From assembly GCA_965637545.1 (NCBI GenBank), contig OZ281498.1, positions 11,966,001 to 12,030,000 of the forward strand: a stretch of DNA of 64,000 nucleotides. Direction: 5' to 3'. Position 1 is the first letter of the stretch, and every line of letters begins with the position of its first letter. Shown here piece by piece: positions 9,701 through 29,298 of this stretch. The position numbers were made by a program, and so were the translations under genes. The notes under the pieces are model-generated. The model saw nothing but the letters and a program-made list of their open reading frames with translations, ran no database searches and was not told the DNA's origin. The DNA comes from Phallusia mammillata. Taxonomy: Eukaryota.

Positions 9701-12700
9701 ACTTTCAACTTGCGTGAAGAACCCACGGTTATTGCACGCGATCTCCCTGACCGGTTTTAAGTAATTCTTTTCCTGGCCAACCAAATAGGCAAAAACACGA
9801 ATCTGAAACAACAGCAACAAACGTACTGTTTTACTGCTTCCCGGAAACTAACTATCGAAACACAACGTTGAAATACTAACAGACATGTTGCGAGTTGCTT
9901 TGGCCTCATCAAAAATCCATTGATAATTTTCCGGCGCTCCATCTGTGATGAGCATAATTGCACAATTACATCCACTGCCAGCACTTCCGTTCTTGTGAAA
10001 CTGTAAAGACATATGGGGTAATTTCAGTTCCACATATACAAATTATTCAATGTAGATTTATTTGCTTCTGTTTAACCACAGGCGTAAAAACTCTAAAATT
10101 GGGCAATTTGCAAAGCCTGTGTTAGGGCAAGCGGACTATGTTTTACCCATAACTTTATCCGAAATAAGATTTTAAACTGCTTGTAGTTTGCCATAATCGC
10201 GTCTAAAAAGCAAAAGAGCATGCCGGCCACCGGGGGTGAAGCCATGTGTGGTGAGCGGCATTTAACAAGTTCAAATATTTACTTTTCTCATCAGAAGATT
10301 AAACAACGATTTGAGAGTGACGATGCTTTGACACGTATTTTAGCATTGCGGTTTGTACGCTGGGGATGGGCCAAAATCTCATTGCAGCTTTTGAGCTTCG
10401 CCCTCGGTTTTATAAGTTAATTGTAACTTTTCTGAACTATTCCTAATTTGTTATGATGTTGGTTAAATCAGAACATACGATACAGACAAAACATCGTAGA
10501 TTCCTACCTTTACTGTGACGCGTTTTATCAAACACAAGCGATTTGATATCAACATCATGTGTGGTTAGAAGTAATACAGTTTAAAACTAATTTGCCAGTG
10601 AAAGTACAATACTGCTGAAACAGTATACTTACATTAGTCATTAATTCCAGAGCGGTGCGAAACGCGGTTTCGAAACATGCTATATCACTGGTGGTGATAT
10701 TCTGCAGGCTTCGCAGAACAGTCTGTAAAAAGAGGAAGACAGCATGTCATATCTAGACAGAGATAAGTGCGTTCCTGACGCGCAACGATCACATGTATTC
10801 TTTTCAAAGCAAGTTAGCTTTGCTTAGTGCCATTTGTTTGTCACGGCTTATGTAAGGTGAATTTTTGAAAAATGATGTTTGATATTTGTTTACCACAGCA
10901 TTTGTGACAGTTGTGTATACAACAGTACACTGGGATTTTTGTGCGAACATGTTAGAGTTAGAGTGAAAGCACAGAGGTCAACTACAGTGTGACTTTAAAT
11001 CAGTGTTGCGTATCGGATCTAGTTATTACGACATTAAAAATAGTCGTAGTTTGCAAAAGTCACTGATTTCTTCAATAACATTCCAAATATTTTGATTTGA
11101 ATTATTCAGAATTTACGTAATGTCTTAAAAACTCTCATACGCATGTTCCGGTGAATAATGGCTCGCATTGCACTGCGGTTTAATTGGTCAATATTACAAC
11201 CAATGCGTTATATATACCTCGATATTCTTTTTATCGGCTCGTACAAGAGTTCCGTTGAAACATGGTTCCACCACTTCAGTCGTTTTCTTGAACTAAAAAC
11301 GAACAAAGTAACTGTCATTATACTCTCATATTACTCCAAAAGTTTACAGAACATGATTAACAGCGCGTTTGAGCAACCTCTACAGTCGCGAACAAACAGA
11401 CAACGCAAATACAGCAGGACTGAATTTCAGCACGAAGATTCGTGATTTTCCCTGCTTAACTTTTAACCTGTGCAATATTCACTTAGTATTCGTTTTAAAA
11501 GTCTAGTTCACAACTCGCAACATTTCTTTAATGACTTCATTCATAGGTGTTTCATTTAGGGAGTTGAATAGTTTACAACATGAAAGTGTTGACATTAGGT
11601 TCAGGTGTGTGCGGGAGTACAACCTGACCACACACAGCCAGCTACCAAAGTATAGTGTAGAAAAACAGTTTTGAAATGAGGCAAGCAGAGCACAAACACA
11701 AATAAAAAAGTCTTGGCCGTTCAAAACGCGAAAACAAGGCCTATAAGAATTTGTACGCAGACTCCCCAGTGTGAAAGCGAGCGATGCGCCATCGTAATTG
11801 ACTCGTAAATCTTCTCCAGTAAATTTATTTACAAAAGATGCCAGTATAAAAAAAACGTTGGTCGCAAAAACTAAGTGTTGGTTAAAAAAGCTTTCTCATG
11901 TGGTAGCTTGAAAACAGATCAAGTTGTTTGGCATTTGTTGCGAATATTTAGGAAAACAAAATATCCAGCAACGGCTTTGTTTATAAACACAGTTACAAAG
12001 AGCCTGGGACTCTTAATCAGGCATTCCTGCTAAAAGCGAAACCAGATTTGAGGAACAAAAAATGATATTTGGAAACAATCAAGCGTGTCCTTTGATTTGA
12101 CGGTGTAAGTTTTTCATGTATATTTCGGCAGAATCGTGTAGCTTACAAAATTAACTTTAAAGCTAACTGAGTGTTGGAAAAGGTTTTAACAGGCCGATAG
12201 TTTGCCGGCGATACAGACGCCTTTCACGCTCGTGCAATACAAAAGCGCCCAAAACAGCTTACAGGTGAATAGTCTGCATTTGTTAGGGTAATCTGAATAA
12301 AAAAGTCCCTTTAGTGGGTATTAAGTTTTGAGTCCTGAAACTGGTTTTACGCGTGGGTGTTTAAGTGGTGGCTTGCGACCCTGTTTGCTTTGCACACAGT
12401 CAGTGGTTTGTAGTTCGAAGAAAAACAGTCGCAACGATGCCTTTTTAGTGTATGGTGTAGCTTTAGTTTAATACGCAGAATGTAGACAAAGTACATCAGG
12501 TTCAGAATCATGATAACTTTGGTTTGCAGCAAATGGAACCTTAAGATGGTTACTTTTCTGTACCATTAATTTTTCCGATGTGAAACGGTAAACACATTAG
12601 CCTAAGGTGCCGCTACCAAACTGGAAAATGCTGTGGATAGCGAGTGGCTTCATTTTATTGCTTTGTCAATCTTGTGTCCGTAGTAAATCGGTCACGAAGC

Positions 12701-15700
12701 CTGATCTGCAAACCCATGAGTGTCTACGTCGGGCCCACTATTACCGGGACCCAAGTCGCTTTGCCTGCAAAGACTTTGGTCTGTGCTACAAGTATTATTG
12801 CCAGCAAATTGCGCGAAGATGCAATAGTTGCAAGAAGAGCTCAGTTGTCCAACAACCTTGTCTCGTTGTCGAAAAAAAAGCAGTTGTCAACGTGACACAG
12901 GAACCAAGAAAGAAGTATGTAACCATGGATGCTGACTTGTTTCAAACTGCAACAATGGAAATTCCTGAAGACCTTCCCAAGAAAAACATACTTCGTGTGA
13001 CAGCTGGAAGTCAAGAATGTGCTGCTTTCGTCGCTGAAATTCCGTACAAAAAGAAATCGGCGTACGTACTTTTAACTGCTGCAAGTTGCTTGGTGGATTT
13101 TCAGGTGGAATGTACAGCTAGTAACGAGTACAAAAACGACACACTTCATAGAAAAGAGGATCACGTATGCTTTGGATACAAGCGATGGAAGGTTCAGTCA
13201 GTTAATAAGGGATTCCGGTCCTATTGTGCCACTATACATAAAGAAGGTAATACAATGCATGTAAACGTGAAAAATGCTTCCCCTTTTAGTGATGGGAACT
13301 TCCCATCCATTAATTTCATTGTGAACTTTGCGTCCATTACCACACGATGTAGGCCAATTTAAGTAAGGTCTGCTGCTCGTTAACTTGGTCAAACTATTTA
13401 TCAGCTAATGTCTTTGCGGGTCTTTAGATCGGATGATTTGCAATTTCCAAATATTAACTTTGTCCTAAACTTATAGTTTATTCCTAATGAAACGCCAGTA
13501 ACTTTGGACGGTTGTTTAATCTGTCAATATTGTGCTTTTAAACGGCAAATGTCAAAACGCATGGGCGCCCCGCGTCTATTATAGTATATCTCCTGTGGGA
13601 TGTCAGCTGTCTACAGCAAACAATTGCGGTTTGTCTTCCAGGTCTATCAACGCAGATAGCCTTGAACGGAAAGACGGTAATGGTTCCAAGGCAATTTATA
13701 GAGTGCGGCGACTGTCGTTTCGACTTGGCGATAATTCGGCTAACGTCAAAGCAGTTTGGGGAGTTGAATGTCAGTTTTTCCGGGGCACACACTCTCGTGG
13801 CAAAAGACAAAGCAGAACTGGCCAACCACACTGTTTCAATTCAAAGCATACGTGAAGGCTGTGTGGGAGAGAGCAAAGATTCCACCATACCTCTGACAGT
13901 GGGGGGCGTTATCAGCAGTGCACAAAAAATGAAGCTTTGTATTATGCTTGGAAACATAACACACCGCACGTTCGAGAACTTGCTCTCTGGCGGCCCAGTG
14001 TCGTTGACTAATAGCGACTCAAGAGAGGTTGTGGGGGTAGCAACGCACATCGTACGTACACAAGTGCAGATTGATGACTCCAGCAACGACCTTAAAACTG
14101 TGACAGAAGCTCCTTTTGGAACGCAAATTCCTATTTTGGATCTCCCAATTGTGTCTGCAGTTAGAATATCGAAGGGTTTTATTAGTTTCGTCGGCCGTTG
14201 GTTGGACGCAACGCGAGATAGAAGTCCATGTGCGTTGAAGCTTCATCCAAGGTTTGACTGTTATCCTTCCTACCCAAAAGCCTTTGTAAACCAATCGTTG
14301 TGCATGTGCTCAAGGGGATGGACCAATGAGAGGTAAGTATGTTGCATTTTCAACGGGGACAGGTTGCACTAATAATTTATAAAACTATCTATTGCGTAAA
14401 TTTATTTTCTAACAAATGCGCATACCGCTAGATTTAATGGACAATCAACAGTCAAAAGTTTATTTCAAAATATTTGGTGTAAAACAGAAAAAATGACGGA
14501 CATTCCCCCGTAAATATTTTCAATACATTTGATTAAAAACAGAAATTCGTGCAAGAATTCGCTGGAGGTTATGTCGGAGAAATGCAAGTGGAACGCAAAA
14601 CAGCGGAATGCCAAGTGTAACGACCAACAAAGACTCCCATATAAGATCAACAGTCGGCGAAGACGTGCAATAGATTTGGAAATTATTCCCGGTTTGACAA
14701 CAAAACTGTTGCATACATGATTTAATATTCAAGCGAAGACTTTTTGGCCATTTGAATGCTAAGTTATATATGCCTTAAATTACATTTGGTTTTAACCAGC
14801 AACATTTTCTGTGTTTTTGTCCAATTTTGGTTAAAGAATTAACAACATGCAGTTCACGTTTTCTTTTACGGTTTGAAAGTTAAACGTTTTTATTGGTTTT
14901 ATTTTATTAGTTTATAGAATTATTTACAAACGCGTGCAAAGAAAGTTAAATTGCAATAAACGTAACATATTTGAAGTTTGAACCAATTTTAATGCCCTGG
15001 GGATAATTGATTGATTTTTAAAATTGAAATTTTCCACAACAAATTTTTACAAAACGTTTCAGGATCAACAACAAAACTAAGTCTTCTTTACGACAACATC
15101 ACAAATCCTGTGGAAATTGAGGAACTGCTACGACATCTGACTGACTTAGAAAGACTTGTCCTCGATTGCAATCATTTACAGGTGAAATTCCGTTTACTTA
15201 CTAGGAAATAACTTTGGAGGCGATTGTTTAATCATGAAAGTGGTATTCTGTATTGATTTTCTATTGAAATCCATATTTATGTGTTAAATGCATGCGAGAA
15301 ATAGTCAAAAGCCATCAGCACTGAAGTGGGCGCCAATAAAAATCAATGTTACTTTATCGGATTAATAATCTTGTGGGCAATTAAAATAGATTTGTTGTGG
15401 TAATTTCATGCAACAGTAATTGCTTTTAGAAGCAATCCGTTTTCAACAAATACAGAGTTTGCCATGGTATCATTATTAAAGGATTACAACTCAACGCAAT
15501 AACTTGTTTTCATATTTAAGACCACAAACTGAGTAAACGATTCCTTGCACAACCAGTCTTTTACAAAACTTTCATTTTTTGCGCTAAATTTCAGAAAACC
15601 TTGTGGAAAACATTCCAGTATGGAAGAAAATTGCGTTTTCTATCACTGCGATTTAACAACCTCACATGGCTCCACAGCGGCACCTTTCGGAAAAATCGAC

Positions 15701-18700
15701 AATTGTTATATCTATGTCTGGCAAATAACAGCATACCTGCCATCAACAATAAGCATTTTTCCAAACAAAACCAATTAGTGAATCTGGACCTAAGAGACAA
15801 CAAAATATGCGAAGTGACAGAGAAGGCCTTTCGAAAACTGAAAAACCTTGAAAGGGTGCTGCTGGGTAACAACCAATTGAAAACTTTACCTCGACACTTG
15901 TTTCAGAAAACAAAAAAACTGAAAGAGATTTGGCTTGAAAACAATTTGTTGGTGGGACTGCGCAGGGAGATATTCTCATTCTGTCCAGAACTGCGTTTTG
16001 TCAACTTAGAGGGCAATGGACTGATTCGACTGCCAAATGGCTTATTTATGGGGAATCCCCACCTCTACAACCTAAATTTCAATAATAATCAACTTGAGGA
16101 ACTGCCAAGTGATCTTCTCGATCATCAAAATTATATCACCCACGTCACTTTGTACAACAACACACAACTGCCGTTGCCCTTTACGTTGTCTGAATTTACA
16201 TCTTCGACAATTAACAATCTGAAAGGTTTGCTTGATCGATACGGTCGAGTTTGAGATGCATAATGGAAATTACTTCTCCGATATCACTCACTTAACTTAT
16301 GTATGAATTTCGAGGTTTGAGTGCCAGTTCAGACTATTTAAATTTACTTTGTTTGTGGTTGTTGTTTTTATTGTTGTTGTTTGACGATGTATCTACGCTT
16401 ACCGTATGGCTAATCACAGTAACATTTTAGCCTATAAAACAGTAACTGCCAAACAAGAACTTCCTTGTCTTTGCACTTCTGGGCATAAATAAAAAAGTGT
16501 ATATTTTAACTAATTTGTATTCAGTTACTTGGATTGATTTTAAGGGGGGGACTGTGCAACAGTCGCTTGCTTGTTCAGAATAAACGGTCACAATTATCAG
16601 TTACCGGATTTCAAGAAAAAACACTCTTCGCCCGGCGGTTAAATTAGCGAGTCCGCCTCTTTCAACTGTTCAATATTTTATGGAGTCGCCTGTCAGCCGA
16701 AACTGTTGCCGCTGCGCACGGACGGGCCATTACATGTGTCGCTGAACAACCTCTAGTTCAACAAATTATCCGAAAATCAATAGACCCCGACGGACGCGGA
16801 AATCGGCTTACGAAAGCCAATCAATGAAAAGCGACTACAATCTGTTGCGTTTTGTCTCAATCGACCTACCAAACGCATAAGATCATACCGTAAGCACGTT
16901 GAAGAAGTCGTTGTCACTCAAAGTCCCCAGTAGAGTGGTAACTGCATGAACCGCGATGGATTTTCGTAGCCCTGTCATGCTACCGCTTGAATCGACGAGT
17001 ACCACCATATCCTTGGGGTAAGTGGCGGCTTGAGTGTACCTACAAATGGTTTTCGATGTTGTGTTCGTTAAAATTTGCTACATCACACGAAAGCTCAACA
17101 TGATCAAAGGCCAGATTATGAAAAAGGGACTAGATCCAAACGCATGCTCGAATTTACTGATGCAAGACACTCATATCTATTTTGCCCGTGCCATTATTTC
17201 TTTTCCAAAATAGAGGGAAATTGAATGTAGTTCCTTATGTTAACGAAGGCAACCAGTACCATGACTTGCTAAACGATTTAAACAGGCCGCTTCAATTATT
17301 TTGTGCTTTAAGAATTCAGCAATGTATATCACAACGTACCCGCCCCTAATGTATTATTAACTAAATTAAACAACGTAATATTTATAGTGGATATAAAACC
17401 CTTTCTACTTAACTTTCATCAAAAAATAACTACACAAGAAAACACGGAACACGGACTTAAAGTCGTGTGTTGGCCATAATTATTATAACATTCTATTAAA
17501 ACCATGTCTTCAAATTTTACCCCCAAATAGTTTGACAAATATGTACCATTGTTGAGTGCGACAGTCGTACAAATTCAGCTTTCCAGTATCCGAAACCAAT
17601 TTCCATTGAAATCCTGGAAATATTCGAACGTAGCCTTCAACAGAGCCGAAATATTGCCATTTTAAACTTGGGTCGCGCTGCAGATTTTCCCGAAACTGAG
17701 CGTTTAAATTCTTGGACCATTCAACAGATTTTAATAGATCACTGTCTGAGAAAACAATTAGGAAAAGTTATACTTCCAAGTTTCAAGCTGTTGATAGTAC
17801 ATACAACCAGTGGTGGGATTCAAATTTTTTGTCAGCCAGTTCTGGTTTATGGTGGAAAATAAAATGTATCAAAGAAGGAGTTGGTGCCCTAGATCTCATT
17901 TTGTTTTATTGCAGTTCTTTGTAATCGACCATGGTTCGGGATCTACCCGTGGCTTTACAAATAAAATGCCCTTTGAGGTGACATTAATAAATTATTCATC
18001 TACAGTGAATTAGAATGAAACGCACGCCACGTCTCTAATACATGTTTCTTGGAACGTATCTTCCACCTTTTGTAGATAAGGTAACAGACACATACTGATT
18101 GAAAGCCAAAATTAACTTGATTTAAGGTAACAGTCAGTTAACTTGAATGTTTTGAAAACGTATGTTTGGAGCCAATTTCTTATATTTAACAGAATTAATG
18201 ACTTTCTTACTTTGCAACAGTTTGTTAGGGTTAGCGAATTTGTTTATTACATGATATACCTTTGCAGTAGACGTTAAATGGAACTTGCACAACCGACGTG
18301 TTTATATTTACTTTCGTCTTGAAACGCGAGTTCTTTTCGAAAACCATTGTTTTTCGAAGGTCAGCATAATCGTCATCTGTAAACAAGACATTCATCGTTG
18401 AAAAGATTTGTAAAGTGAGTTGGTATCTACTGTGCACTCACGGTCTAACAAATTATCTTCTTCCCTTGCGTTAATGTACTGCACGTTATTGTAATTGGGC
18501 GAAGGAGTCCACGACCAGTTTGTGGAGGCAGCAAACTGTTCCCCAGCTTCCACAAGACGCTGCCAAATCAATCAAAATTGCGTTAACAGAATCCAAAACG
18601 GTCTGGATCAGTCCCCACTCCCCGTTTTTGTAGTTTAAAAATTATATCCATATAAATTTACATCAGGAGCAAAGAAAAATTAAGACAAATACGTTTACAC

Positions 18701-20095: not shown

Positions 20096-22073
20096 TCACA
20101 AACACAGCAGTGAATAAGCTGTTACCAGCTGGTTTCATTCCAGGGCGTCATTTAGTTTATTACTACAGTTGATTTTTTAAAGTAATGCACAACACACGTC
20201 GTATATCTCCTATTACGCTGGTGGGGTTATCCCATGACGTCTTTTGTGTTCTTATAATTTACGATTACAGAAAAAGTGGCTTTGGGCCTACTGGAAATTT
20301 TAACATTAATAATTTATGATGGCACATCACCCGGATTATCATTTAGTTCAAAGTTACAGCAATTCAAAACATCTCAACTAAAATGTGTTCGGCAAAGATG
20401 GCATGCAGTGCCAATTTTCATGCCGAAATAAAGAAATGACACCAATCAGAACTCTTGTTTTGCAGTGACTTAACCTGTATTGCACTTCGGTATATGCAAT
20501 GTAGCCTACTGTTACTTGTCACTAGAACTGCTTCTGCTCTGAAATCTTCACGAAATCTCAAAGCTGAAATCTTGACCTAAATGTGAACCTCGAGTGTAAC
20601 AGAATAATCCACGGCAATATAGCATTATCATTGATCGGCAAATCACAACCCGCTGCCTGCATCGTAATGCAATAAATTATTTAATTTCGACCTAATCAGC
20701 TCTTCCGACTGCTTTCAGGTGCTATTTTTTTCGGAACTTGCGTTCAATTATTCAGTGGTCCTGCTGCGTAGGCAATGTGTTGCTACCCGACTTCTAGCAT
20801 CTAAAACGTGCAGCAGACTTGCCGGACCGTTTTGTTACCATTCTGTGCACTCTGCTCACTACATATCGCCGACTGAATACCGCCAACCCTTGTACGCCAT
20901 AAAATAACGATTGCTTTCTCCGGGCAAGACGACTAGAAGCAGAACATCAATAATTTAAACGACAAGTCCCGGGGCATTTAGTGTGCGTCACTTTTGCAAG
21001 TCTATAGCGCCTCTTATCTCGCAACTGTCAAATAAGAATACAAAGTTCAGGCAACAAACGGACTGTTGACAACCGGAAGTTCTGGTAAAATCATTAAGAC
21101 GTTTCATGATATGATAACAACACACTTGGACGATTTAAAGCAATTTGCTATTTAAAGCAATTGAATACATGTTTTCACAAAGTACTTCTTATATTATAAG
21201 TTAAGACTTATACGTTACATTCAGCACAATTAAATTAACAGTCAAAGTGCGTGTTTTGATTGCCACCGCAGGCTGTTGAGTACGTACAGTGCGGTTCATC
21301 TACTGATGCTAACAACTTATGCTTACAATTGGTGGTTTATATGTTATCCTTGATCAGACACGTCTAAAATCGACTTTATACAAATTTGAAAAATATAGAT
21401 CATGGTTGAATTTTTTACTTTCCTACGGGCCAGTAGTTTTTGTGTAACATAGGGCTTAATAAACTGCCTTTTAACACTATTTTGTTATTTTAGTTTTGGT
21501 GGTTTTGCCCACTGATTGAGTGGTGCATCAATAAGCAAATAATGGTCAGCAGTAACAAAATTAAAGTAATAATATATTTTTAACACACAAATCACAACGC
21601 AAAATAACTACCATACCATTAAAACAGCACGCTAAAAGCAAAGGTACACGAAACATCTCATGGCACAAGAAAAGAATGGCTACGAGGCAAATTATCCAAA
21701 GATTAGTAAATTTTACAGTTGTGCAGGAAGACGAATTAATCGTAACTACATTTGATCAGGTTATGAGCTAATCTACGCTACGATGAACACTTGTGGGCAA
21801 AAAGGCAATGGATTTTGGATATGTAAGCATTGCAAACTTAGAGCGTGAATGCTGTAACACTTGTCAAGTGGTTTCAAAAACCGTTAGGTATTGGCTATAA
21901 CGTAAAGGCAAAAATTGGTTAAGGAACTTTCAAATAACAGTGTTCTAAACAAGTGCTTGTCGCCAAGGCACCAGGAGTATATAAAAGCGCATTGAAGCAA
22001 ATCTCAGAGTTCAAACAGGTAACACTAAAAACACACACACGCGGCATTTAACACTTAGTAATTTAATAGGGGC

Positions 22074-25000
22074 TTATTTCTTTGCTGGAATGAGATCAGC
22101 AATATCTTCACCAGCCATAAGCTTCTTTTCCATCTTTACAAGGATTTCAACACCGTCAACGACACACTGGACTTGTTCCACTTCGGACGAACCAAGTCTG
22201 ACAAAATCAGGAACAGATTAACCCAAATGAAACTGGTTATTGGTTTGACAAATAAAAAGGCAACTTTGCGCAAACCAATAGTTTGCAACTTGTGCACAAT
22301 GCAGTCATTTCTTATTGTTACAAATTTTACCGGTCCAGATTGGAGATATCAAAGGTCCCGTCATCTGATGCTGTATCGACACCTCCGGTGCCGCGCTTCT
22401 GGAGACGCAAGCTTTCAAGAATTTCGTTAAATCTGCGGCAAAAGATAGTGGCACTCATGTAAGATGGTAAATGCCGAAAAAAATGCCAAAAGTTTAAAGT
22501 CTAGTGATTTATTCGACACACGCTGAAACTTTGTAGCTGCGTTCGAACGGCTGGCAAATGATAAATATCGTAAATCTCATTTACTTAACGAGAAGTAATT
22601 ACGGAACACAGTCATTGTTGTAAATAAATCTGCGTGACGGATTAACAATACGACACTGGGACAACCGTTTGCGGTAGGGCACGATACATCGGATTAGGAA
22701 ACATCACCATCATGTAATATGATCACAGAAGGTGGTGCCTACAAACCTTTTGTCCTTGCAGAGAAGGGGCAACTTTACATGGACGCCTCCTCTCAAACCG
22801 GTGCCGAGGTTGGAGGGACAGGTGAGAACGTAGCCAAGATGCTCGTTCCACATAAACGATTTGCCGTTTTGCTTGAGCGAGTTTTCGACCTGCGTGACAC
22901 CGCGACAGAACCTGAACACAGAAAATCACAAAATAAAGTCAATACCATCCAAATCTCAACACTGGCCCTACTAAGTCACAGCTATGAAACAATTGACACT
23001 TTTACGACCTTTCGAAAACTGCTTTCATGTTTCCTCCCTTTTCCATAGAAATCAGACGCAAGTGATCTTCCTCATTGACCCAGACCAAAAAGTTCTTCTG
23101 ATCGTTGTGCCAAATTCCACGAGCATCGGGCCAATCACGTGCCATACCTGTGTTACGTCATATCGAATGAGTCAGTTCGCTGATTGTCAAGATATAGGCC
23201 AATAATTTTACCTGCGCTTGTAAGCAAGGGAGAAACTGGTTTGTCAAAAAGGAAGTGGTCGGCAATAAGTTGGTCCTGTTGAGCTTCTGTCATTTCTCCA
23301 AGCGGGTAGTACTTACCTTGTAAGTCTCCGCTCAACCTAAAGTTTTTTCAAAAAAACGTTATTTCGACGCTGACTTTTCAAGCGTGTTTTAGAAGTTCAA
23401 ATTCTTCAGAATTCATGATTTAAATACAGTAAGTTGTAGGATATGGTATTATAAAACGTATTCACAAACCAACAGCTGAGCTAGCACGAATCTTACTGTT
23501 GCAGAGCGTTGCGAGCAAGTGTTTCGACAGCTCTTCTTTCAGCACGATTGCACCACGGTGGCAGGGAAAGTCCACGGATACTGCGCCCAGTGCGGACTCG
23601 ACTGGAAAGAACGAAGTTTTCGTCGAAATTGCCTCCCCGCAAGTTTTCAGGATTTAGATCTGTCTTGTGCTTGCCATCCGCTGGAAAACCGTTGTGGCGG
23701 TCTAGGAAGAAGACACGAATAGTAACCTCTATACCCAGCGTTGATTAACAAGTAAAATAATTTTCTCTTGCAAACAAATTTAAAACCTAAATAATAGATA
23801 ATTATTAGTTGCTTACTGGAAATGACAGGTTCAAATAGCTCCTTGAATACGTTGTAACATTCCTCGTCACCGGCTGTTAAACCGACTGTGAATATAAACG
23901 GGTGGCCAGGGTTGTCCACTCCGGTCTGTATGCAACTGTCGAGAGTACAACCTATACAACACAATTCATGCACATTATAAAGGAACATTTCAATCACCTC
24001 AACATAACAAGCAAGACATACAAAGCTTCAGCAAAACAGTACATCTAGTCATGGTACTTAGTTTGCCTTAAAACGGTAGTTACGCTAGCAAACAGTTGTT
24101 TCAGTGGCCTCATTAAAAAGTCTTTGTGACAGGTTAGCATACCACTGCTGGTCTTTTTGTTTTCCAAGGCCAGATATATTTCCTTGGTGAGGCATTTAGC
24201 CATCCAATTGTTGTGCTGCGACAAATCTGGATAGTTGTCAAACGAATGCTTCACCTCAACCTGAAAAATATAAGCAAAAGTAACAAAAACAAATGCAATT
24301 TTAAACCGTACATGTTTACTTGAATCTGTCCTTCAAGATCCAAACTTAGGAACCTATTTTACTTCTACTAGGATGTGAAAATGCATTTAAGTTCAGACAA
24401 CTATAGATAAATTTACCTGTGCAACTTGTTTGTCATCTTGTTTGGACAGCTTCTTCTCACTTGGGATCATGTTATCGATGGATTGGCTTGCTTCCAGTTT
24501 TTTCTCCATTTCGATGAGCATTTCGACACCATCAATCACACACTGAACTTGCTCCACTTCCGACGATCCAAGTCTAATATAAAGCAAGACGTTTATAGCT
24601 TACATTTTTTACATAAGCAAACAATATGTTATGGGAAGCATGACTTGTGGAAACGCGTTTTGTAATGATACCTGTCTGAGTTGGAAATATCAAAAGTCCC
24701 GTCGGTGGAGGCTGTGTCCACTCCGCCTGTGCCACGTTTCTGCAATCTCAGGCGTTCCAAAATTGTTTCAAACTTCTTATGTTTGCTCAAAAGAGGAATC
24801 TTTAAATGGACACCTGGAAATGGACAACAGGCAAGATTGCCAGAGGAAAAATCTGATGCTGTTAAATAAGTATGCTCAGAAAAAAGAGGGGGGAAATCGC
24901 AGGCATACCTCCGCGCAAACCAGTACCAAGGTTGGACGGACATGTCAGAACAAATCCCAGATGTTGGTTCCACATGAAAGAATGTCCGTTGCTTTGTATA

Positions 25001-28000
25001 GTTTCTTCAACCTGCGACACGACACAAACAAATGAGGTTAAATTTCCACGACATGTATCGTTTTACATTGAATTGTGTTTAGTTCCACATTTCTATACTT
25101 TAGCACTTGGGGCGGCATGTGATTCGCAACCACTAAAAAATGTTCTTGAATGAGAACTTTCGAAATGGCATAGATTACCTTCTTTAGACCATCGCAAAAT
25201 CGCTCAAAAACAGCTTTCATGTTTCCGCCCTTTTCCATCGATATAATGCGCATGTGGTCCTCTTCGTTTACCCAAACCAGGAAATTTTTCTCGTCGTTGT
25301 GCCTACACACAATAAAGTATAGATAAGGTTTTAGTATGGCAGCAGCACTAAAAAAAGGTTTAATACAAACAGTATCCCTGTCTTATACAATACAAAACAC
25401 ACTTTTTTAATTACCATATTCCACGGGCGTCTGGCCAGTCTCGCGCCATCCCGGAACTGGTGAGAAGCGGGGAAACTGGTTTATCGAACAGGAAGTGATC
25501 AGCAATAAGTTTGTCCTGGGTTTCTTCACTCATTCCAGTTAGGGGGTAATAGGAGCCCTAAAATGGATGAAGAGGAAATACACAATGTTTTTTTGTGTGG
25601 GTAGAAGCCCATTTTTAGATCGGTTGCGTACTGCACGCTTGAGTGAAACTACCTTCAATGGGCCATCGAGGGATGCCAGCGCCTGAGTTACGATGGTTTC
25701 AACCTTTCTTCTCTCCCCACGCGAACACCACGGTGGTAATGCCAAAGTGCGAATGCTGCGTCCTATGTAAATGCAGAGTCAAGTATATTGCGTGATAGTT
25801 TCGTAATGATATGTTATTGCATTAAAACAGCTTATCAAATTGTGCTACAGCTGATAGCAGCTATAACTGACCAGTTCTGACTCTGGACGAAAGGACGTAT
25901 TTAGGATCCAAGTTGTCGCCACCTCTAATGTTTGCTGCGTTAAGATCGGTGCTGTGTTTGGCTGTGGACGAATACCTGAAATATATAACACAAGCTAAAA
26001 GTTTTATCGAAAACAATTAAAAATGACTTTTAGTTTTCAGTGTGTTTGGGCTACTGATTAACAATTTTTGCACCACAATGCACCTAAGGTTCCTATTGGA
26101 CATCAGTGGCAACGTGGTACCACACGTGAGCCAATACACTTTGGGCAAACATCATATTAACTTTATTTGTGCAACACCTCAAACAAATCTTCAAATTGTG
26201 TGTTGCAAAGTTCACAAAGATTCAACTCAAGTGTTTGTGCTATGCACCTGTTAGCCGTCTCCATAGTGTTGCAGTGAATGTTTTTGACAACAAACCCTAT
26301 CAAATTGTAGCCACTAGGAGGCAGTACAAAAACTTTAAACAAAGGAAAACTTTAACAAAGGAAATTTTTTTGTAAATTTTCTACCCGCCATGTCTTCCAC
26401 TGATTACTGGGTCAAAAAGCTCAGAAAAGGTTGAATAACTTTCCTCGTCACCTGCCACCATTCCCACTGTCATAATAAATGGATGTCCCGGATTGTCCAC
26501 TCCTGCATTGCATTTGAAATTTGTGATTTTTCTTAGTTTCATCATTAAGTTTTTCTTACCAGTTTGGATGCAGCCATCCAAAGTAAAGCCACTTGGCGTT
26601 TTTCTGTTCTTGATTTTGTTGTAAATACTTGGTGTGAGGCATTTTGACATCCAGTTGTTGTGTTTTGACAAATCAGGAAAGTTCTTGTCATTCAAATCTT
26701 CAGTTTTCTGTTCACTTGGGAGCAAGTCATCGATCTCGTCACCTAATTTACACAGTTTAGGTTGGTTTCATGTGAAAAAACTGTGTGCCGTGAGAGATTT
26801 CTATGTGTGGTGCAAAATTTTTGGTTATTCTAAAGTGCAAACTGTCCCAGGACTTTATGTCGAAATACTGGTGTGCATGAAAACATTTCAAAGCTCATAT
26901 TTTAGATATAGGTAATAAAAAGCACAATAAAGTTGAAAGTTAAACAACACGTAAATTGTGCCCTTAAAACCGTGATAACTTACCAGCTTCCAGCTGTTTT
27001 TCCATCTTTATGAGGAGGTTGACACCATCAACTACACACTGCACCTGTTCCACTTCAGATGATCCCAACCTTTAAAACAGAGGCATTAACACAAGTTTTT
27101 GCCACAATATCTATGTGCAGAACATCCATGCACCTTTCAGAATTTGAAATATCAAACGTTCCATCAGTGGAGGCTGTATCCACACCACCTGTTCCTCTCT
27201 TTTGAAGCTTCAGTTTTTCCAAAATGTCATTGAATTTAGGATGCTTGGCCATAAGAGGAATCTAAAAAATGATCTTCTGTGACAATTTATTCCTGATTAC
27301 TTTACTTTAAATTTAATACTTGGGATTTCCCAGTACATGATTATTTGTTTTCAGTCATGAATATATTACAAATGCTTACCTTTAAATGAACACCACCTCT
27401 TAGTCCTGTGCCCAAATTTGAAGGACAGGTGAGGACAAAACCAAGATGTTCATTCCACATAAATCGTGACCCATTTGCTTCAATTGCATTCTCCACTTTT
27501 TTAAGCCCTTCACAAAATCGAGTAAACACCCTCCGCATGTTGCCACCTTTTTCCATGGAAATCACACGACTGTGATCTTCCTCATTTACCCACACAAGAA
27601 AGTTCTTTTCCTCATTGTGCCTGAAACATACAAAGTTATAATCCCCCAAAAATCATAAGTTTTAAAAAAGAAATTCCAACCAAATTCCTCTGCTTTCTGG
27701 CCAGTCACGAGCCATTCTGGATGCAAGCAATAATGGAGAAACTGGTTTATCAAAAAGGAAGTGGTCTTCAATAAGTTTATCCTGTGTTTCTTCAGTCATT
27801 CCAGTCAGGGGGTAGTACTTTCCCTTAAATGGTCCATCTAATGAATCCAGAGCTTCCATAAGTATCTTCTCCACCTAACCAAATCAAAGCCATCAACATA
27901 TTACTAATACTACAGTTAAGAGTTCGTACCTCTCTGCGCTCAGCCCGATTGCAGCAAGGTGGCAAGGCATATCCTGCTATACTTCGCCCGGTTCGCACAC

Positions 28001-29298
28001 GAGATGACAGAACATAGTTTGGATCCAGATTGTCTCCACCAATTAAGTGTTCTGGGTTGAGGTCAGTCTTATGAAGTTGATCTTTTCCTGAAAATTGTTT
28101 TAACATTAGGTACACTATTCACAGTTTTGAATAATCTGAGCAAAAAAATCAGAGCCAGTATATTGGTGTATAACATAACTACGTTTCGACAAGTGCTATT
28201 GTCATCATCAGGTTGTAAAAAATAAAAGCGACAGAAGGCATGCAACTGGGTGACATACAACGGTAAAAAAAAGGCGACACGAAGTTAACATGTAAAAGCA
28301 ATTAAACGGAGATAAAAGAACGCACGCAGAAAGGGGGTGTACCCGAGGCAAGTACGACCGCTAGATATTAAACAAGTAGAGTGGTGTAGATTCCTGGTCT
28401 TTGTTTAATTCTAACATTGTTGTTTTAACAATGTTTTAACATTGTTGTGTAGAAACATCCTGAAAATGCTCTTTGGGAGCTTTTGGACTAAAATACACAA
28501 AACAATTTTTGGCATCAAGAATTTGACATGGGTCAAACATATTTGTACTGCAACCATTTTAAATGTTTAAAATCAAAGTGCAGTAGTTAAAATGACAGAA
28601 AAGCAACTTCAAGTGTAAAAAACAGGCATCTGTATTTTGAGTTCAATTTAACTATTCTAGAATATCTAAATTATACATTCCTAATGCAATATTAGTCAAA
28701 GGTTTTGCACTGAAAATACAAATTCTCACCATATCCACCATGTCTAGCACTTATAATTTTGTCAAACAATGGTGCAAACAGTTTATAGGACTCTTCATCT
28801 CCAGCAACTGCCCCCACTGTCATAATAAATGGATGGCCAGGATTGTCCACACCTAAAATGCAGTTAAACATCAACATTTTGGTATTAGGAAACAAACAAC
28901 ATTTTGCTTGAAACCTGTTTGAATGCAATACTCCAGAGTTACCCCAGATGCCGTTACTTTTGAACACAACTCATTGTACAGTTTTGGTGTTAGGCATTTT
29001 GCCATGTGATTGTTGTGTTTAGATAAATCTGGGTAATTGGAGCCAAGTTTGCTGAAAATGTAAAATTCACAACATATTGAGACTTAAAACAAAGTTGCAA
29101 ATCAAATTTTGATTATTTAGACATTCTTTCGAGAGGATTTTAAATAATGATGCTCAATACAAAACAATTAAATAAATACCTTGTTGAAACAGTCACTCCT
29201 AAAAAAACAAAATAAAGAACTGTCATCATCTTTCTTTCTTTTAAAGGATAGTTGCAATTATCATAGTACTTACCATCTTTGGAATTAACACAACCCAT
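22074..29298 (-). CDS. Flagellar-type creatine kinase with three contiguous CK domains (about 26 coding exons)
   Basis: Start MGCVNSKD (29298-29274), 19-nt microexon (29198-29180), then three complete domains. Each has PDLSx[47 protein letters not shown] and [10 protein letters not shown]. Linkers lie at about 26740 and 24420-24260; stop TAA at 22074-22076. Confidence 0.95.
28150..28411 (-). mobile_element. 5'-truncated Penelope-like retroelement fragment in a creatine kinase intron
   Basis: Minus strand 28411-28361 encodes [16 protein letters not shown], resembling the LN....S.PL.LF C-terminus of PLE RT/GIY-YIG ORFs. A short UTR and a hammerhead motif follow. Confidence 0.6.
28174..28217 (-). 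ncRNA. Minimal type I hammerhead ribozyme motif (PLE type)
   Basis: Minus strand reads UACAAC CUGAUGA U GACAA-uagcac-UUGUC GAA ACGU A GUUAUG. This gives the conserved core, a 5-bp stem II, a palindromic ACGU stem III, a GUA cleavage triplet and a stem I with one mismatch. Confidence 0.7.

What the first reader, a model, noticed from the sequence alone, without database searches (positions are those of the whole stretch)
12628..16254. Nested antisense gene fusing a dead trypsin domain, an EGF-like module and an LRR array inside a CACNA2D intron
Seen: five plus-strand exons inside the 5.6-kb minus-strand intron 16888-11293 can be joined into a protein of roughly 760 aa. The order is signal peptide, 7-Cys region, trypsin fold, CMCSRGW..C (EGF-like), LRR N-cap, about 10 LRRs, with no transmembrane segment. 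The ORF track shows these only as unrelated fragments. Known: trypsin domains and LRRs are both common in innate immunity, coagulation and matrix signalling, but I do not recognise this combination. Inference: a lineage-specific secreted recognition/scaffold protein, with the LRRs as sensor and the pseudo-protease as adaptor or decoy.
Basis: partly seen in the sequence, partly recalled or inferred. Interest (0 to 1): 0.78.

Follow-up and report, generated by a model that had tools for sequence, protein, structure and literature searches.

The report
Tunicate dead-protease–LRR gene nested in CACNA2D
A real, selectively maintained sea-squirt gene for a secreted protein that joins a catalytically dead, trypsin-shaped domain to ten leucine-rich repeats lies antisense in the same intron of the calcium-channel alpha2delta gene in at least five tunicate genomes; databases list it only as an uncharacterised LRR protein.

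Summary
Five plus-strand exons (12628-13246, 13642-14332, 14543-14691, 15063-15181, 15595-16254) join through GT-AG introns in consistent phase into 745 codons. They lie inside the minus-strand CACNA2D-like intron 16888-11293.

The exons tile colinearly onto full-length proteins of Ciona intestinalis (XP_002123780, "uncharacterized") and Clavelina lepadiformis (745 aa), and onto an intronless mRNA-type contig carrying one 705-aa ORF. It is therefore one gene, not two.

Pfam and PDB sequence searches see only the LRRs. AlphaFold models of the orthologues, built with the window's exons in the alignment, give a chymotrypsin (PA-clan) fold: VIA Z 15.6, and all 50 listed Foldseek hits are PA-clan proteases. 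The His57 position is S/K/N/T in every member, so the domain is a pseudoprotease.

The "EGF-like module" is only a Cys pattern and was modelled at low confidence.

The family is tiny, with 8 relatives among 1.84 billion representatives, all tunicate or unnamed marine contigs. The nesting in the intron after the host's MIDAS exon is conserved in five genomes.

The protease-fold plus LRR combination is not unique: arthropod and probably bacterial clusters carry it. Vertebrate LRTM1 is likewise an LRR gene nested in CACNA2D3, but in a different intron.

Function is inferred only: a secreted binding or adaptor protein. No RNA data for this species could be obtained.

The parts
12628..13246 (+). 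Exon 1. It holds the start ATG (A at -3, in-frame stop 13 codons upstream) and a hydrophobic signal-like N-terminus. It also holds the conserved 7-Cys region (12718-12861) and the first part of the PA-fold domain, including 'LLTAASC' (TAASC at 13075-13089), where Ser replaces the catalytic His57.
13642..14332 (+). Exon 2: the rest of the PA-fold pseudoprotease. It carries the family motif ECGDC (13701-13715) and the Asp102-type strand 'DLAIIRL' (13722-13742). 'SGGPV' (13986-14000) stands in place of GDSGGP. The Cys pattern C-M-C-S-R-G-W is at 14301-14321. The donor AG|GTAAGT gives an in-frame stop if the intron is retained.
14543..14691 (+). Exon 3: a 3-Cys linker that may be an LRR N-cap (not confirmed), with the tetrabasic SRRRRA at 14655-14666. 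The donor G|GTTTGA is weak, but its position is conserved in L011.
15063..15181 (+). Exon 4: the first, degenerate LRR and the start of the second ('[11 protein letters not shown]').
15595..16254 (+). Exon 5: eight further LRRs with cores spaced exactly 24 residues apart. It ends in a C-terminal helix-forming tail and the stop codon. There is no TM segment and no hydrophobic GPI-type tail.
16488..16493 (+). AATAAA polyadenylation-type signal, 234 nt after the stop.
16889..17077 (-). Host CACNA2D-like exon with the VWA MIDAS motif (VLVDSSGSM). It is shown as an open frame whose upstream border was not mapped. The donor GT is at 16888-16887.
11218..11292 (-). The next host exon (75 nt, [25 protein letters not shown]), after the acceptor AG at 11294-11293. 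It is 73% identical to the matching exon in the relative L008/L009.
17513..17767 (-). Host exon encoding the end of the VWA_N domain (Pfam PF08399, E 3.7e-18). This fixes the host as an alpha2delta-type gene.

Best explanation
This is one intact five-exon gene for a 745-aa secreted, cysteine-rich, probably N-glycosylated protein. It belongs to a small family seen only in tunicates and unnamed marine contigs.

Its N-terminal half is a 7-Cys module followed by a highly diverged chymotrypsin-fold (PA clan) domain. That domain cannot run the classical charge-relay mechanism, because the His57 position is Ser here and is never His in any relative. Its C-terminal half is a solenoid of ten 24-residue LRRs, reached through a Cys-containing linker.

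The gene has sat antisense in the intron after the MIDAS-motif exon of the calcium-channel alpha2delta (CACNA2D-like) gene since before the sampled tunicate lineages diverged.

Shown: gene structure, colinearity with orthologues, fold of the orthologues, loss of the triad, purifying selection, conserved nesting.

Inferred: it acts outside the cell by binding, not by cleaving. The LRR concave face and the degenerate substrate cleft would be its two ligand surfaces, as in other pseudoproteases such as HGF beta-chain, protein Z, haptoglobin and arthropod serine-protease homologues. In this lineage a furin-type RRRR site may allow the two halves to be separated. Its ligand and its tissue are unknown.

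The confidence given applies to the whole statement. For the shown parts alone it is about 0.9, and for the inferred binding role about 0.5.
For: Gene model:
- GT-AG introns, consistent phases, 2238 nt, no internal stops.
- The five exons tile the Ciona (723 aa) and Clavelina (745 aa) proteins and three unnamed 675-705 aa proteins end to end.
- A 2768-nt contig from run ERR1719351 carries a single 705-aa ORF. The exon-1, 2, 3 and 5 equivalents are contiguous in it; exon 4 (39 aa) gave no separate hit, though the gap between the exon-3 and exon-5 hits is the right size for it.
- The exon-2 donor is at the same codon position in six genomes, this one included.

Constraint: against the closest relative, pN is 0.22 and pS 0.78 (saturated), and the introns cannot be aligned.

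Fold:
- AF2 of Ciona residues 20-416 has a core pLDDT of 70-90 and pTM 0.71.
- Foldseek reports at least 500 hits at E<=0.001; all 50 listed are PA-clan proteases, the best being 1p3c at E 8.5e-7.
- VIA-align gives 1p3e_A Z 15.6, rmsd 3.1, 191 of 215 residues. In all, 116 chains score Z>=8, including the pseudoproteases protein Z and SMIPP-S.
- Atlas neighbours by shape and by language-model features are Trypsin/Trypsin_2.

Dead triad: the alignment shows S/K/N/T at the His position, and the Ser195 position is not conserved.

LRRs: LRR_8 at 1.5e-28, and 10 strands with pLDDT 70-97.

Secreted type: only the N-terminus is hydrophobic, there are 10 NxS/T sites and 29 Cys.

Nesting: the same intron is used in Ciona, Clavelina and two unnamed relatives.
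Against:
- The fold was predicted for orthologues that are 30-38% identical, from shallow alignments of 13-15 rows. It was not predicted for the window's own joined protein, which was deliberately not built.
- Pfam, PDB phmmer and a family profile find no protease by sequence.
- Catalytic-position assignments rest on motif and secondary-structure register, not on a residue-level structural superposition.
- The signal peptide was judged by hydrophobicity only.
- Nothing bears directly on ligand, tissue or role.
Confidence: 0.7

Rival explanations
1. There are two genes: a short secreted pseudoprotease ending at the read-through stop after exon 2 or exon 3, and a separate LRR gene downstream.
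For: Retaining intron 2 gives an immediate in-frame stop (AGG TAA). Reading through the weak exon-3 donor stops at 14720. The Clavelina annotation also lists a 430-aa product that ends exactly at the end of exon 2, so a short isoform may exist alongside the long one.
Against: Exons 3 to 5 have no start codon or signal peptide of their own. The phases match across all junctions. RefSeq models in two species join both halves. An intronless mRNA-type contig and 675-688 aa proteins on 2.8-3.6 kb contigs carry both halves in one ORF.
Confidence: 0.05
2. It is an active protease with a non-canonical active site. The window's copy keeps Asp at the 102-type position and Ser at the 195-type position.
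For: 'DLAIIRL' and 'LLSGGPV' are present in the window.
Against: No member has His at the 57-type position. The 195-type position is P, N, I or E in the relatives, and Pro in the closest one. The Asp is Gly in two relatives. Residues needed for catalysis would be conserved across the family.
Confidence: 0.05
3. The LRR half is the tunicate counterpart of vertebrate LRTM1/LRTM2, which are LRR genes nested in CACNA2D3/CACNA2D4. On this view 'an LRR gene inside an alpha2delta gene' is an ancient arrangement in tunicates and vertebrates, and the pseudoprotease half was gained in tunicates or lost in vertebrates.
For: LRTM1 is listed as nested in host CACNA2D3 (PMC3933685, Table 1) and lies in intron 26 of human CACNA2D3 (PMC2533032). 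LRTM2 adjoins the deleted CACNA2D4 exons (PMC5615344). The tunicate nesting is old and stable. No second LRR gene lies in the host gene within this window.
Against: The intron differs: the one after the MIDAS exon here, against intron 26 in human. The tunicate protein has no TM segment and no Pfam LRRNT or LRRCT caps. The word search with the LRR exon found no LRTM or any named relative. LRR genes are often nested in large neuronal genes, as Table 1 of PMC3933685 shows, so independent nesting is plausible.
Confidence: 0.1
4. It is a decaying or unexpressed relic in this species, an ORF kept open by chance.
For: No RNA evidence could be obtained for this genome.
Against: The gene has 745 open codons over five exons with intact splice sites. 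pN is 0.22 against a saturated pS of 0.78, and the introns cannot be aligned. All family cysteines and motifs are kept.
Confidence: 0.03

Closest known systems
PA-clan pseudoproteases (HGF/MSP beta-chain, protein Z, haptoglobin, azurocidin, scabies-mite SMIPP-S, arthropod clip-domain serine-protease homologues)
   Same: They share the two-barrel chymotrypsin fold with a broken catalytic triad, are secreted, and are fused to or work with other binding modules. Protein Z (3f1s_B, Z 13.4), the SMIPP-S proteins (3h7o_B and 3h7t_B, Z 12.8-12.9) and HGF-beta (4k3j_A, 4o3t_A) are among the structural matches.
   Different: There is no detectable sequence similarity to any of them or to Pfam Trypsin/Trypsin_2. 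There is no activation-cleavage IVGG-type N-terminus. The family has its own motifs (ECGDC, a 7-Cys N-module). The partner domain is an LRR array rather than kringle, EGF/Gla, CCP or clip.
Bacterial and viral minimal chymotrypsin-like proteases (Bacillus Glu-endopeptidase 1p3c/1p3e, V8 and Spl proteases, sobemovirus and astrovirus proteases; Pfam Trypsin_2)
   Same: These are the nearest structural neighbours (Z 13.9-15.6; Atlas rows) and the nearest language-model neighbours.
   Different: Those are active enzymes with His-Asp-Ser. Here the triad is lost, the domain carries long inserts and extra disulfide-type cysteines, and it sits in an animal mosaic protein. The resemblance may reflect divergence back to a minimal core rather than descent.
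Arthropod 'Peptidase S1 domain-containing' proteins with Trypsin + LRR_8 + LRR_4, and an 872-member LRR + Trypsin_2 cluster (ESM Atlas)
   Same: They combine a protease-fold domain with LRRs in one chain. The arthropod cluster is the top feature-space neighbour of the Ciona orthologue (0.92).
   Different: Their protease domains are recognised by Pfam and the tunicate one is not. No sequence homology was detected in an exhaustive phmmer search. Their domain order and catalytic status were not examined here. The combination probably arose independently.
Vertebrate LRTM1/LRTM2, nested in CACNA2D3/CACNA2D4
   Same: A small LRR-protein gene lies inside an intron of an alpha2delta calcium-channel subunit gene.
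   Different: The host intron differs. The LRTMs are membrane-anchored with LRRNT/LRRCT caps and have no protease-fold domain. No specific sequence similarity was shown.

Membership tests
Peptidase S1 / PA clan (chymotrypsin fold) | Two six-stranded beta-barrels with a C-terminal helix | tested here: met
   Tested on orthologue models, not on the window's own chain. VIA gave Z 15.6 over 191 of 215 residues of 1p3e_A. All 50 listed Foldseek hits are PA-clan proteases.
Peptidase S1 / PA clan (chymotrypsin fold) | Catalytic triad His57-Asp102-Ser195 | tested here: not met
   The His position is Ser in the window (TAASC, 13075-13089) and S/K/N/T in the relatives. The Ser195 position is not conserved, and Asp is kept in most.
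Peptidase S1 / PA clan (chymotrypsin fold) | Significant match to Pfam PF00089 or PF13365, or to a solved protease by sequence | tested here: not met
   No hit for the exons or for the full-length relatives. PDB phmmer and profile searches were empty.
Leucine-rich repeat proteins | Tandem LxxLxLxxNxL repeats recognised by Pfam LRR models | tested here: met
   LRR_8 at E 1.5e-28 with 4 stretches in exon 5. Nine strict cores sit at 24-residue spacing, plus one degenerate repeat. The model has 10 strands.
Leucine-rich repeat proteins | Cysteine caps LRRNT (PF01462) and LRRCT (PF01463) | tested here: not met
   No Pfam hit in the exons or the orthologues. The 3-Cys exon 3 was modelled below pLDDT 50. 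The C-terminus is a helix without cysteines.
EGF-like domain | Six cysteines in the C1-C3, C2-C4, C5-C6 pattern, with a Pfam or structural match | tested here: not met
   Only the C-x-C-x2-G-W-x6-C pattern is present, and it spans the exon 2/3 junction. Four Cys are conserved across the family. There is no Pfam EGF hit. The region has pLDDT below 50 in both models.
LRTM1/LRTM2 (alpha2delta-nested LRR genes) | Nested in an alpha2delta gene | tested here: met
   The host is VWA_N/VWA/VGCC_alpha2 in the window, Ciona and Clavelina. The LRTM1 nesting comes from PMC3933685 and PMC2533032.
LRTM1/LRTM2 (alpha2delta-nested LRR genes) | Same host intron, a transmembrane anchor, and specific sequence similarity | tested here: not met
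   The host intron is the one after the MIDAS exon, against intron 26 in human. There is no TM segment. No LRTM appeared among the word-search hits. A direct alignment to an LRTM sequence was not possible, because no tool supplied one.

The most novel reading that the evidence does not exclude
An LRR gene living antisense inside the alpha2delta calcium-channel subunit gene is an ancestral feature shared by tunicates and vertebrates. On this reading the tunicate pseudoprotease-LRR gene and vertebrate LRTM1/2 descend from one nested gene. The long co-residence would then reflect a functional or regulatory tie between the secreted or anchored LRR protein and the extracellular alpha2delta subunit.
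Probability: 0.1. Interest if true: 0.75.

Novelty: new variant of a known kind. Interest (0 to 1): 0.5.

Why it matters
- It gives a fold and a probable mode of action (binding, not cleavage) to about 400 residues that every database leaves blank in a conserved tunicate protein. It also adds a very divergent branch to the pseudoproteases.
- It documents a host-nested gene pair that has stayed together through the fast-rearranging tunicate radiation.
- That pair parallels LRTM1 in CACNA2D3 in vertebrates. The parallel turns "why do LRR genes sit in alpha2delta genes" into a question that can be tested in Ciona, for example by in situ hybridisation, knockout, or a binding screen that includes alpha2delta itself.

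The finding is not a new kind of system.

Tried and rejected
Tried without useful result:
- Pfam on each exon at E up to 10, PDB phmmer on exons 1 and 2, and a family profile against PDB all gave no protease signal.
- A word search with the Ciona N-terminal half found only Ciona and Clavelina.
- A word search with the LRR exon gave one unnamed hit. My 1e-5 cut-off was strict, but only 280 candidates existed.
- Exon 2 has no paralogue in this genome.
- pN/pS among four near-identical environmental haplotypes rested on at most 5 coding differences and is uninformative.
- Searches for LOC100181791 and for protease-homologue/LRR/tunicate architectures found no paper on this family.
- Earlier scan notes hold nothing on it.

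Left out by rule: the joined 745-aa protein was not assembled, searched or folded. All searches used single exons by reference or database orthologues.

Rejected: two-gene model, active protease, pseudogene, true EGF domain.


Full report
**1. Observation**

The plus strand between 12628 and 16254 holds five open segments. With GT-AG borders they join in consistent phase. The exons are 12628-13246, 13642-14332, 14543-14691, 15063-15181 and 15595-16254. The intron phases are 1, 2, 1 and 0. The total is 2238 nt, or 745 codons plus a stop, with no internal stops.

The start ATG has A at -3 and an in-frame stop 13 codons upstream. An AATAAA lies 234 nt after the stop.

The host is a CACNA2D-like gene on the minus strand. 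A VWA_N exon lies at 17767-17513 (Pfam 3.7e-18) and the VWA MIDAS exon (VLVDSSGSM) ends at 16889. It is followed by a 75-nt exon (11292-11218) that is 73% conserved in a relative.

Everything below uses single exons by reference or database orthologues.

**2. It is one real gene**

An exhaustive phmmer search with exon 2 against 1.84 billion representatives gave only nine hits, eight of them true relatives. The named ones are Ciona intestinalis XP_002123780 ("uncharacterized protein LOC100181791", 723-724 aa) and Clavelina lepadiformis XP_076807665 (745 aa). The rest are unnamed marine contigs.

The window's five exons tile these proteins end to end, with no gap at any junction.

A 2768-nt contig from run ERR1719351 carries one uninterrupted 705-aa ORF. 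In it the exon-1, 2, 3 and 5 equivalents lie back to back, so it is a spliced mRNA of the whole fusion. Exon 4 (39 aa) gave no separate hit there. The 123-nt gap between the exon-3 and exon-5 hits is the right size for it.

The exon-2 donor falls at the same codon position in six genomes, counting this one.

Against the closest relative (L011, 60-75% amino-acid identity), pN is 0.22 while pS is saturated at 0.78, and the introns share no detectable similarity. That is purifying selection.

Exon 2 is single-copy in this 240-Mb sea-squirt genome.

**3. The N-terminal half**

Pfam sees nothing in exons 1-2 or in the first ~400 residues of any relative. PDB sequence and profile searches are empty as well.

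Language-model neighbours of exon 2 are Trypsin_2/PA-clan clusters, which is a lead only.

An AlphaFold model of Ciona residues 20-416, built with the window's exons among 13 alignment rows, has a confident beta core (pLDDT 70-90, pTM 0.71).

- Foldseek against PDB returned at least 500 hits at E<=0.001. All 50 listed are chymotrypsin-fold proteases, the best being 1p3c at E 8.5e-7 with TM 0.60 on the target.
- VIA-align, which does not depend on Foldseek, gave 1p3e_A at Z 15.6, rmsd 3.1, over 191 of 215 residues. In total 116 chains score Z>=8, including the pseudoproteases protein Z and SMIPP-S.
- The Atlas shape search agrees.

The family alignment shows S/K/N/T at the TAA-H-C position; the window has TAASC at 13075-13089. 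Asp is retained in most members (DLAIIRL, 13722-13742). The Ser195 position is not conserved: it is Ser in the window, Pro in its closest relative, and N/I/E elsewhere.

This is a pseudoprotease family. The 7-Cys N-module is conserved but modelled at low confidence.

**4. Linker and LRRs**

C-x-C-x2-G-W-x6-C fits an EGF-type cysteine pattern. However, only four Cys are conserved, Pfam EGF is silent, and the region has pLDDT below 50 in both models. The EGF-like module is therefore not confirmed, and neither is the LRR N-cap.

The LRR array is solid. LRR_8 scores 1.5e-28. Nine strict cores sit exactly 24 residues apart, with one degenerate repeat before them. The Clavelina full-length model has ten strands at pLDDT 70-97 and a terminal helix.

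No TM-grade segment follows the signal-like N-terminus, and there are 10 sequons and 29 Cys.

Exon 3 has SRRRRA (14655-14666). L011 keeps it as GRRKRA, and more distant relatives lack it. It is a possible furin-type site specific to this lineage.

**5. Conserved nesting**

The orthologue lies antisense between the host's MIDAS exon and its next VWA exons in four other genomes. These are Ciona (L002), Clavelina (L003/L004), an unnamed relative assembled from several environmental samples (L006-L009) and a further one (L010). It has the same exon blocks in each.

**6. Comparison with known things**

The combination is not unique. The Atlas has an arthropod cluster with Trypsin+LRR_8+LRR_4, which is the top neighbour of the Ciona protein at 0.92, and an 872-member LRR+Trypsin_2 cluster. 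No sequence homology links them to this family.

Vertebrate LRTM1 is a nested gene of CACNA2D3 (PMC3933685, Table 1) and lies in intron 26 of the human gene (PMC2533032). LRTM2 adjoins CACNA2D4 exons (PMC5615344). This is a striking parallel. But the intron differs, the LRTMs are membrane-anchored, and the LRR exon found no LRTM in a word search. No other LRR gene sits in the host within this window. I rate common descent at about 0.1.

**7. Mechanism and verdict**

The gene, its architecture, the dead triad, the constraint and the nesting are shown. That it works as a secreted binding or adaptor protein with two ligand surfaces is inferred from pseudoprotease and LRR precedents. No ligand, tissue or role is known, and no RNA data for this species could be obtained.

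It is a new, very divergent variant of known kinds (pseudoprotease; LRR mosaic; nested gene). RefSeq already lists it as an uncharacterised protein. Interest is moderate.

Noticed in passing
window 22000-29200, minus strand: There are several tandem creatine-kinase-type gene copies. Repeated exon sets encode [42 protein letters not shown] and [12 protein letters not shown]. Earlier notes place a hammerhead ribozyme in one of their introns.
   Followed up: no
window 14655-14666 (+); L011:1352-1495: A tetrabasic SRRRRA (GRRKRA in the closest relative) lies between the pseudoprotease half and the LRR half. It fits a furin-type R-x-[KR]-R site and is absent from Ciona, Clavelina and the mRNA-type relative.
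   Followed up: partly
P0007 (Clavelina CAK8690516.1) against P0020; window 14331-14336: The Clavelina annotation lists a 430-aa product ending exactly at the end of exon 2 (…GWKNER). In the window, retaining intron 2 gives the same ending (AGG TAA), so a pseudoprotease-only isoform without LRRs is possible.
   Followed up: partly
L006-L009 (JGI 3300001913; ENA ERZ27241786/789/799) and L010 (ENA ERZ17174905): Contigs of 16-30 kb from tunicate-like genomes sit in assemblies filed as metagenomes and were gene-called as if prokaryotic. As a result, single exons of this gene appear in protein databases as separate short 'proteins'.
   Followed up: partly
(model of P0006:20-416): The nearest structural neighbours of the pseudoprotease are bacterial and viral minimal chymotrypsin-like enzymes (Glu-endopeptidase, V8/Spl, sobemovirus, astrovirus) rather than animal S1A trypsins. 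Whether this reflects origin or only loss of the animal-specific loops was not examined.
   Followed up: no
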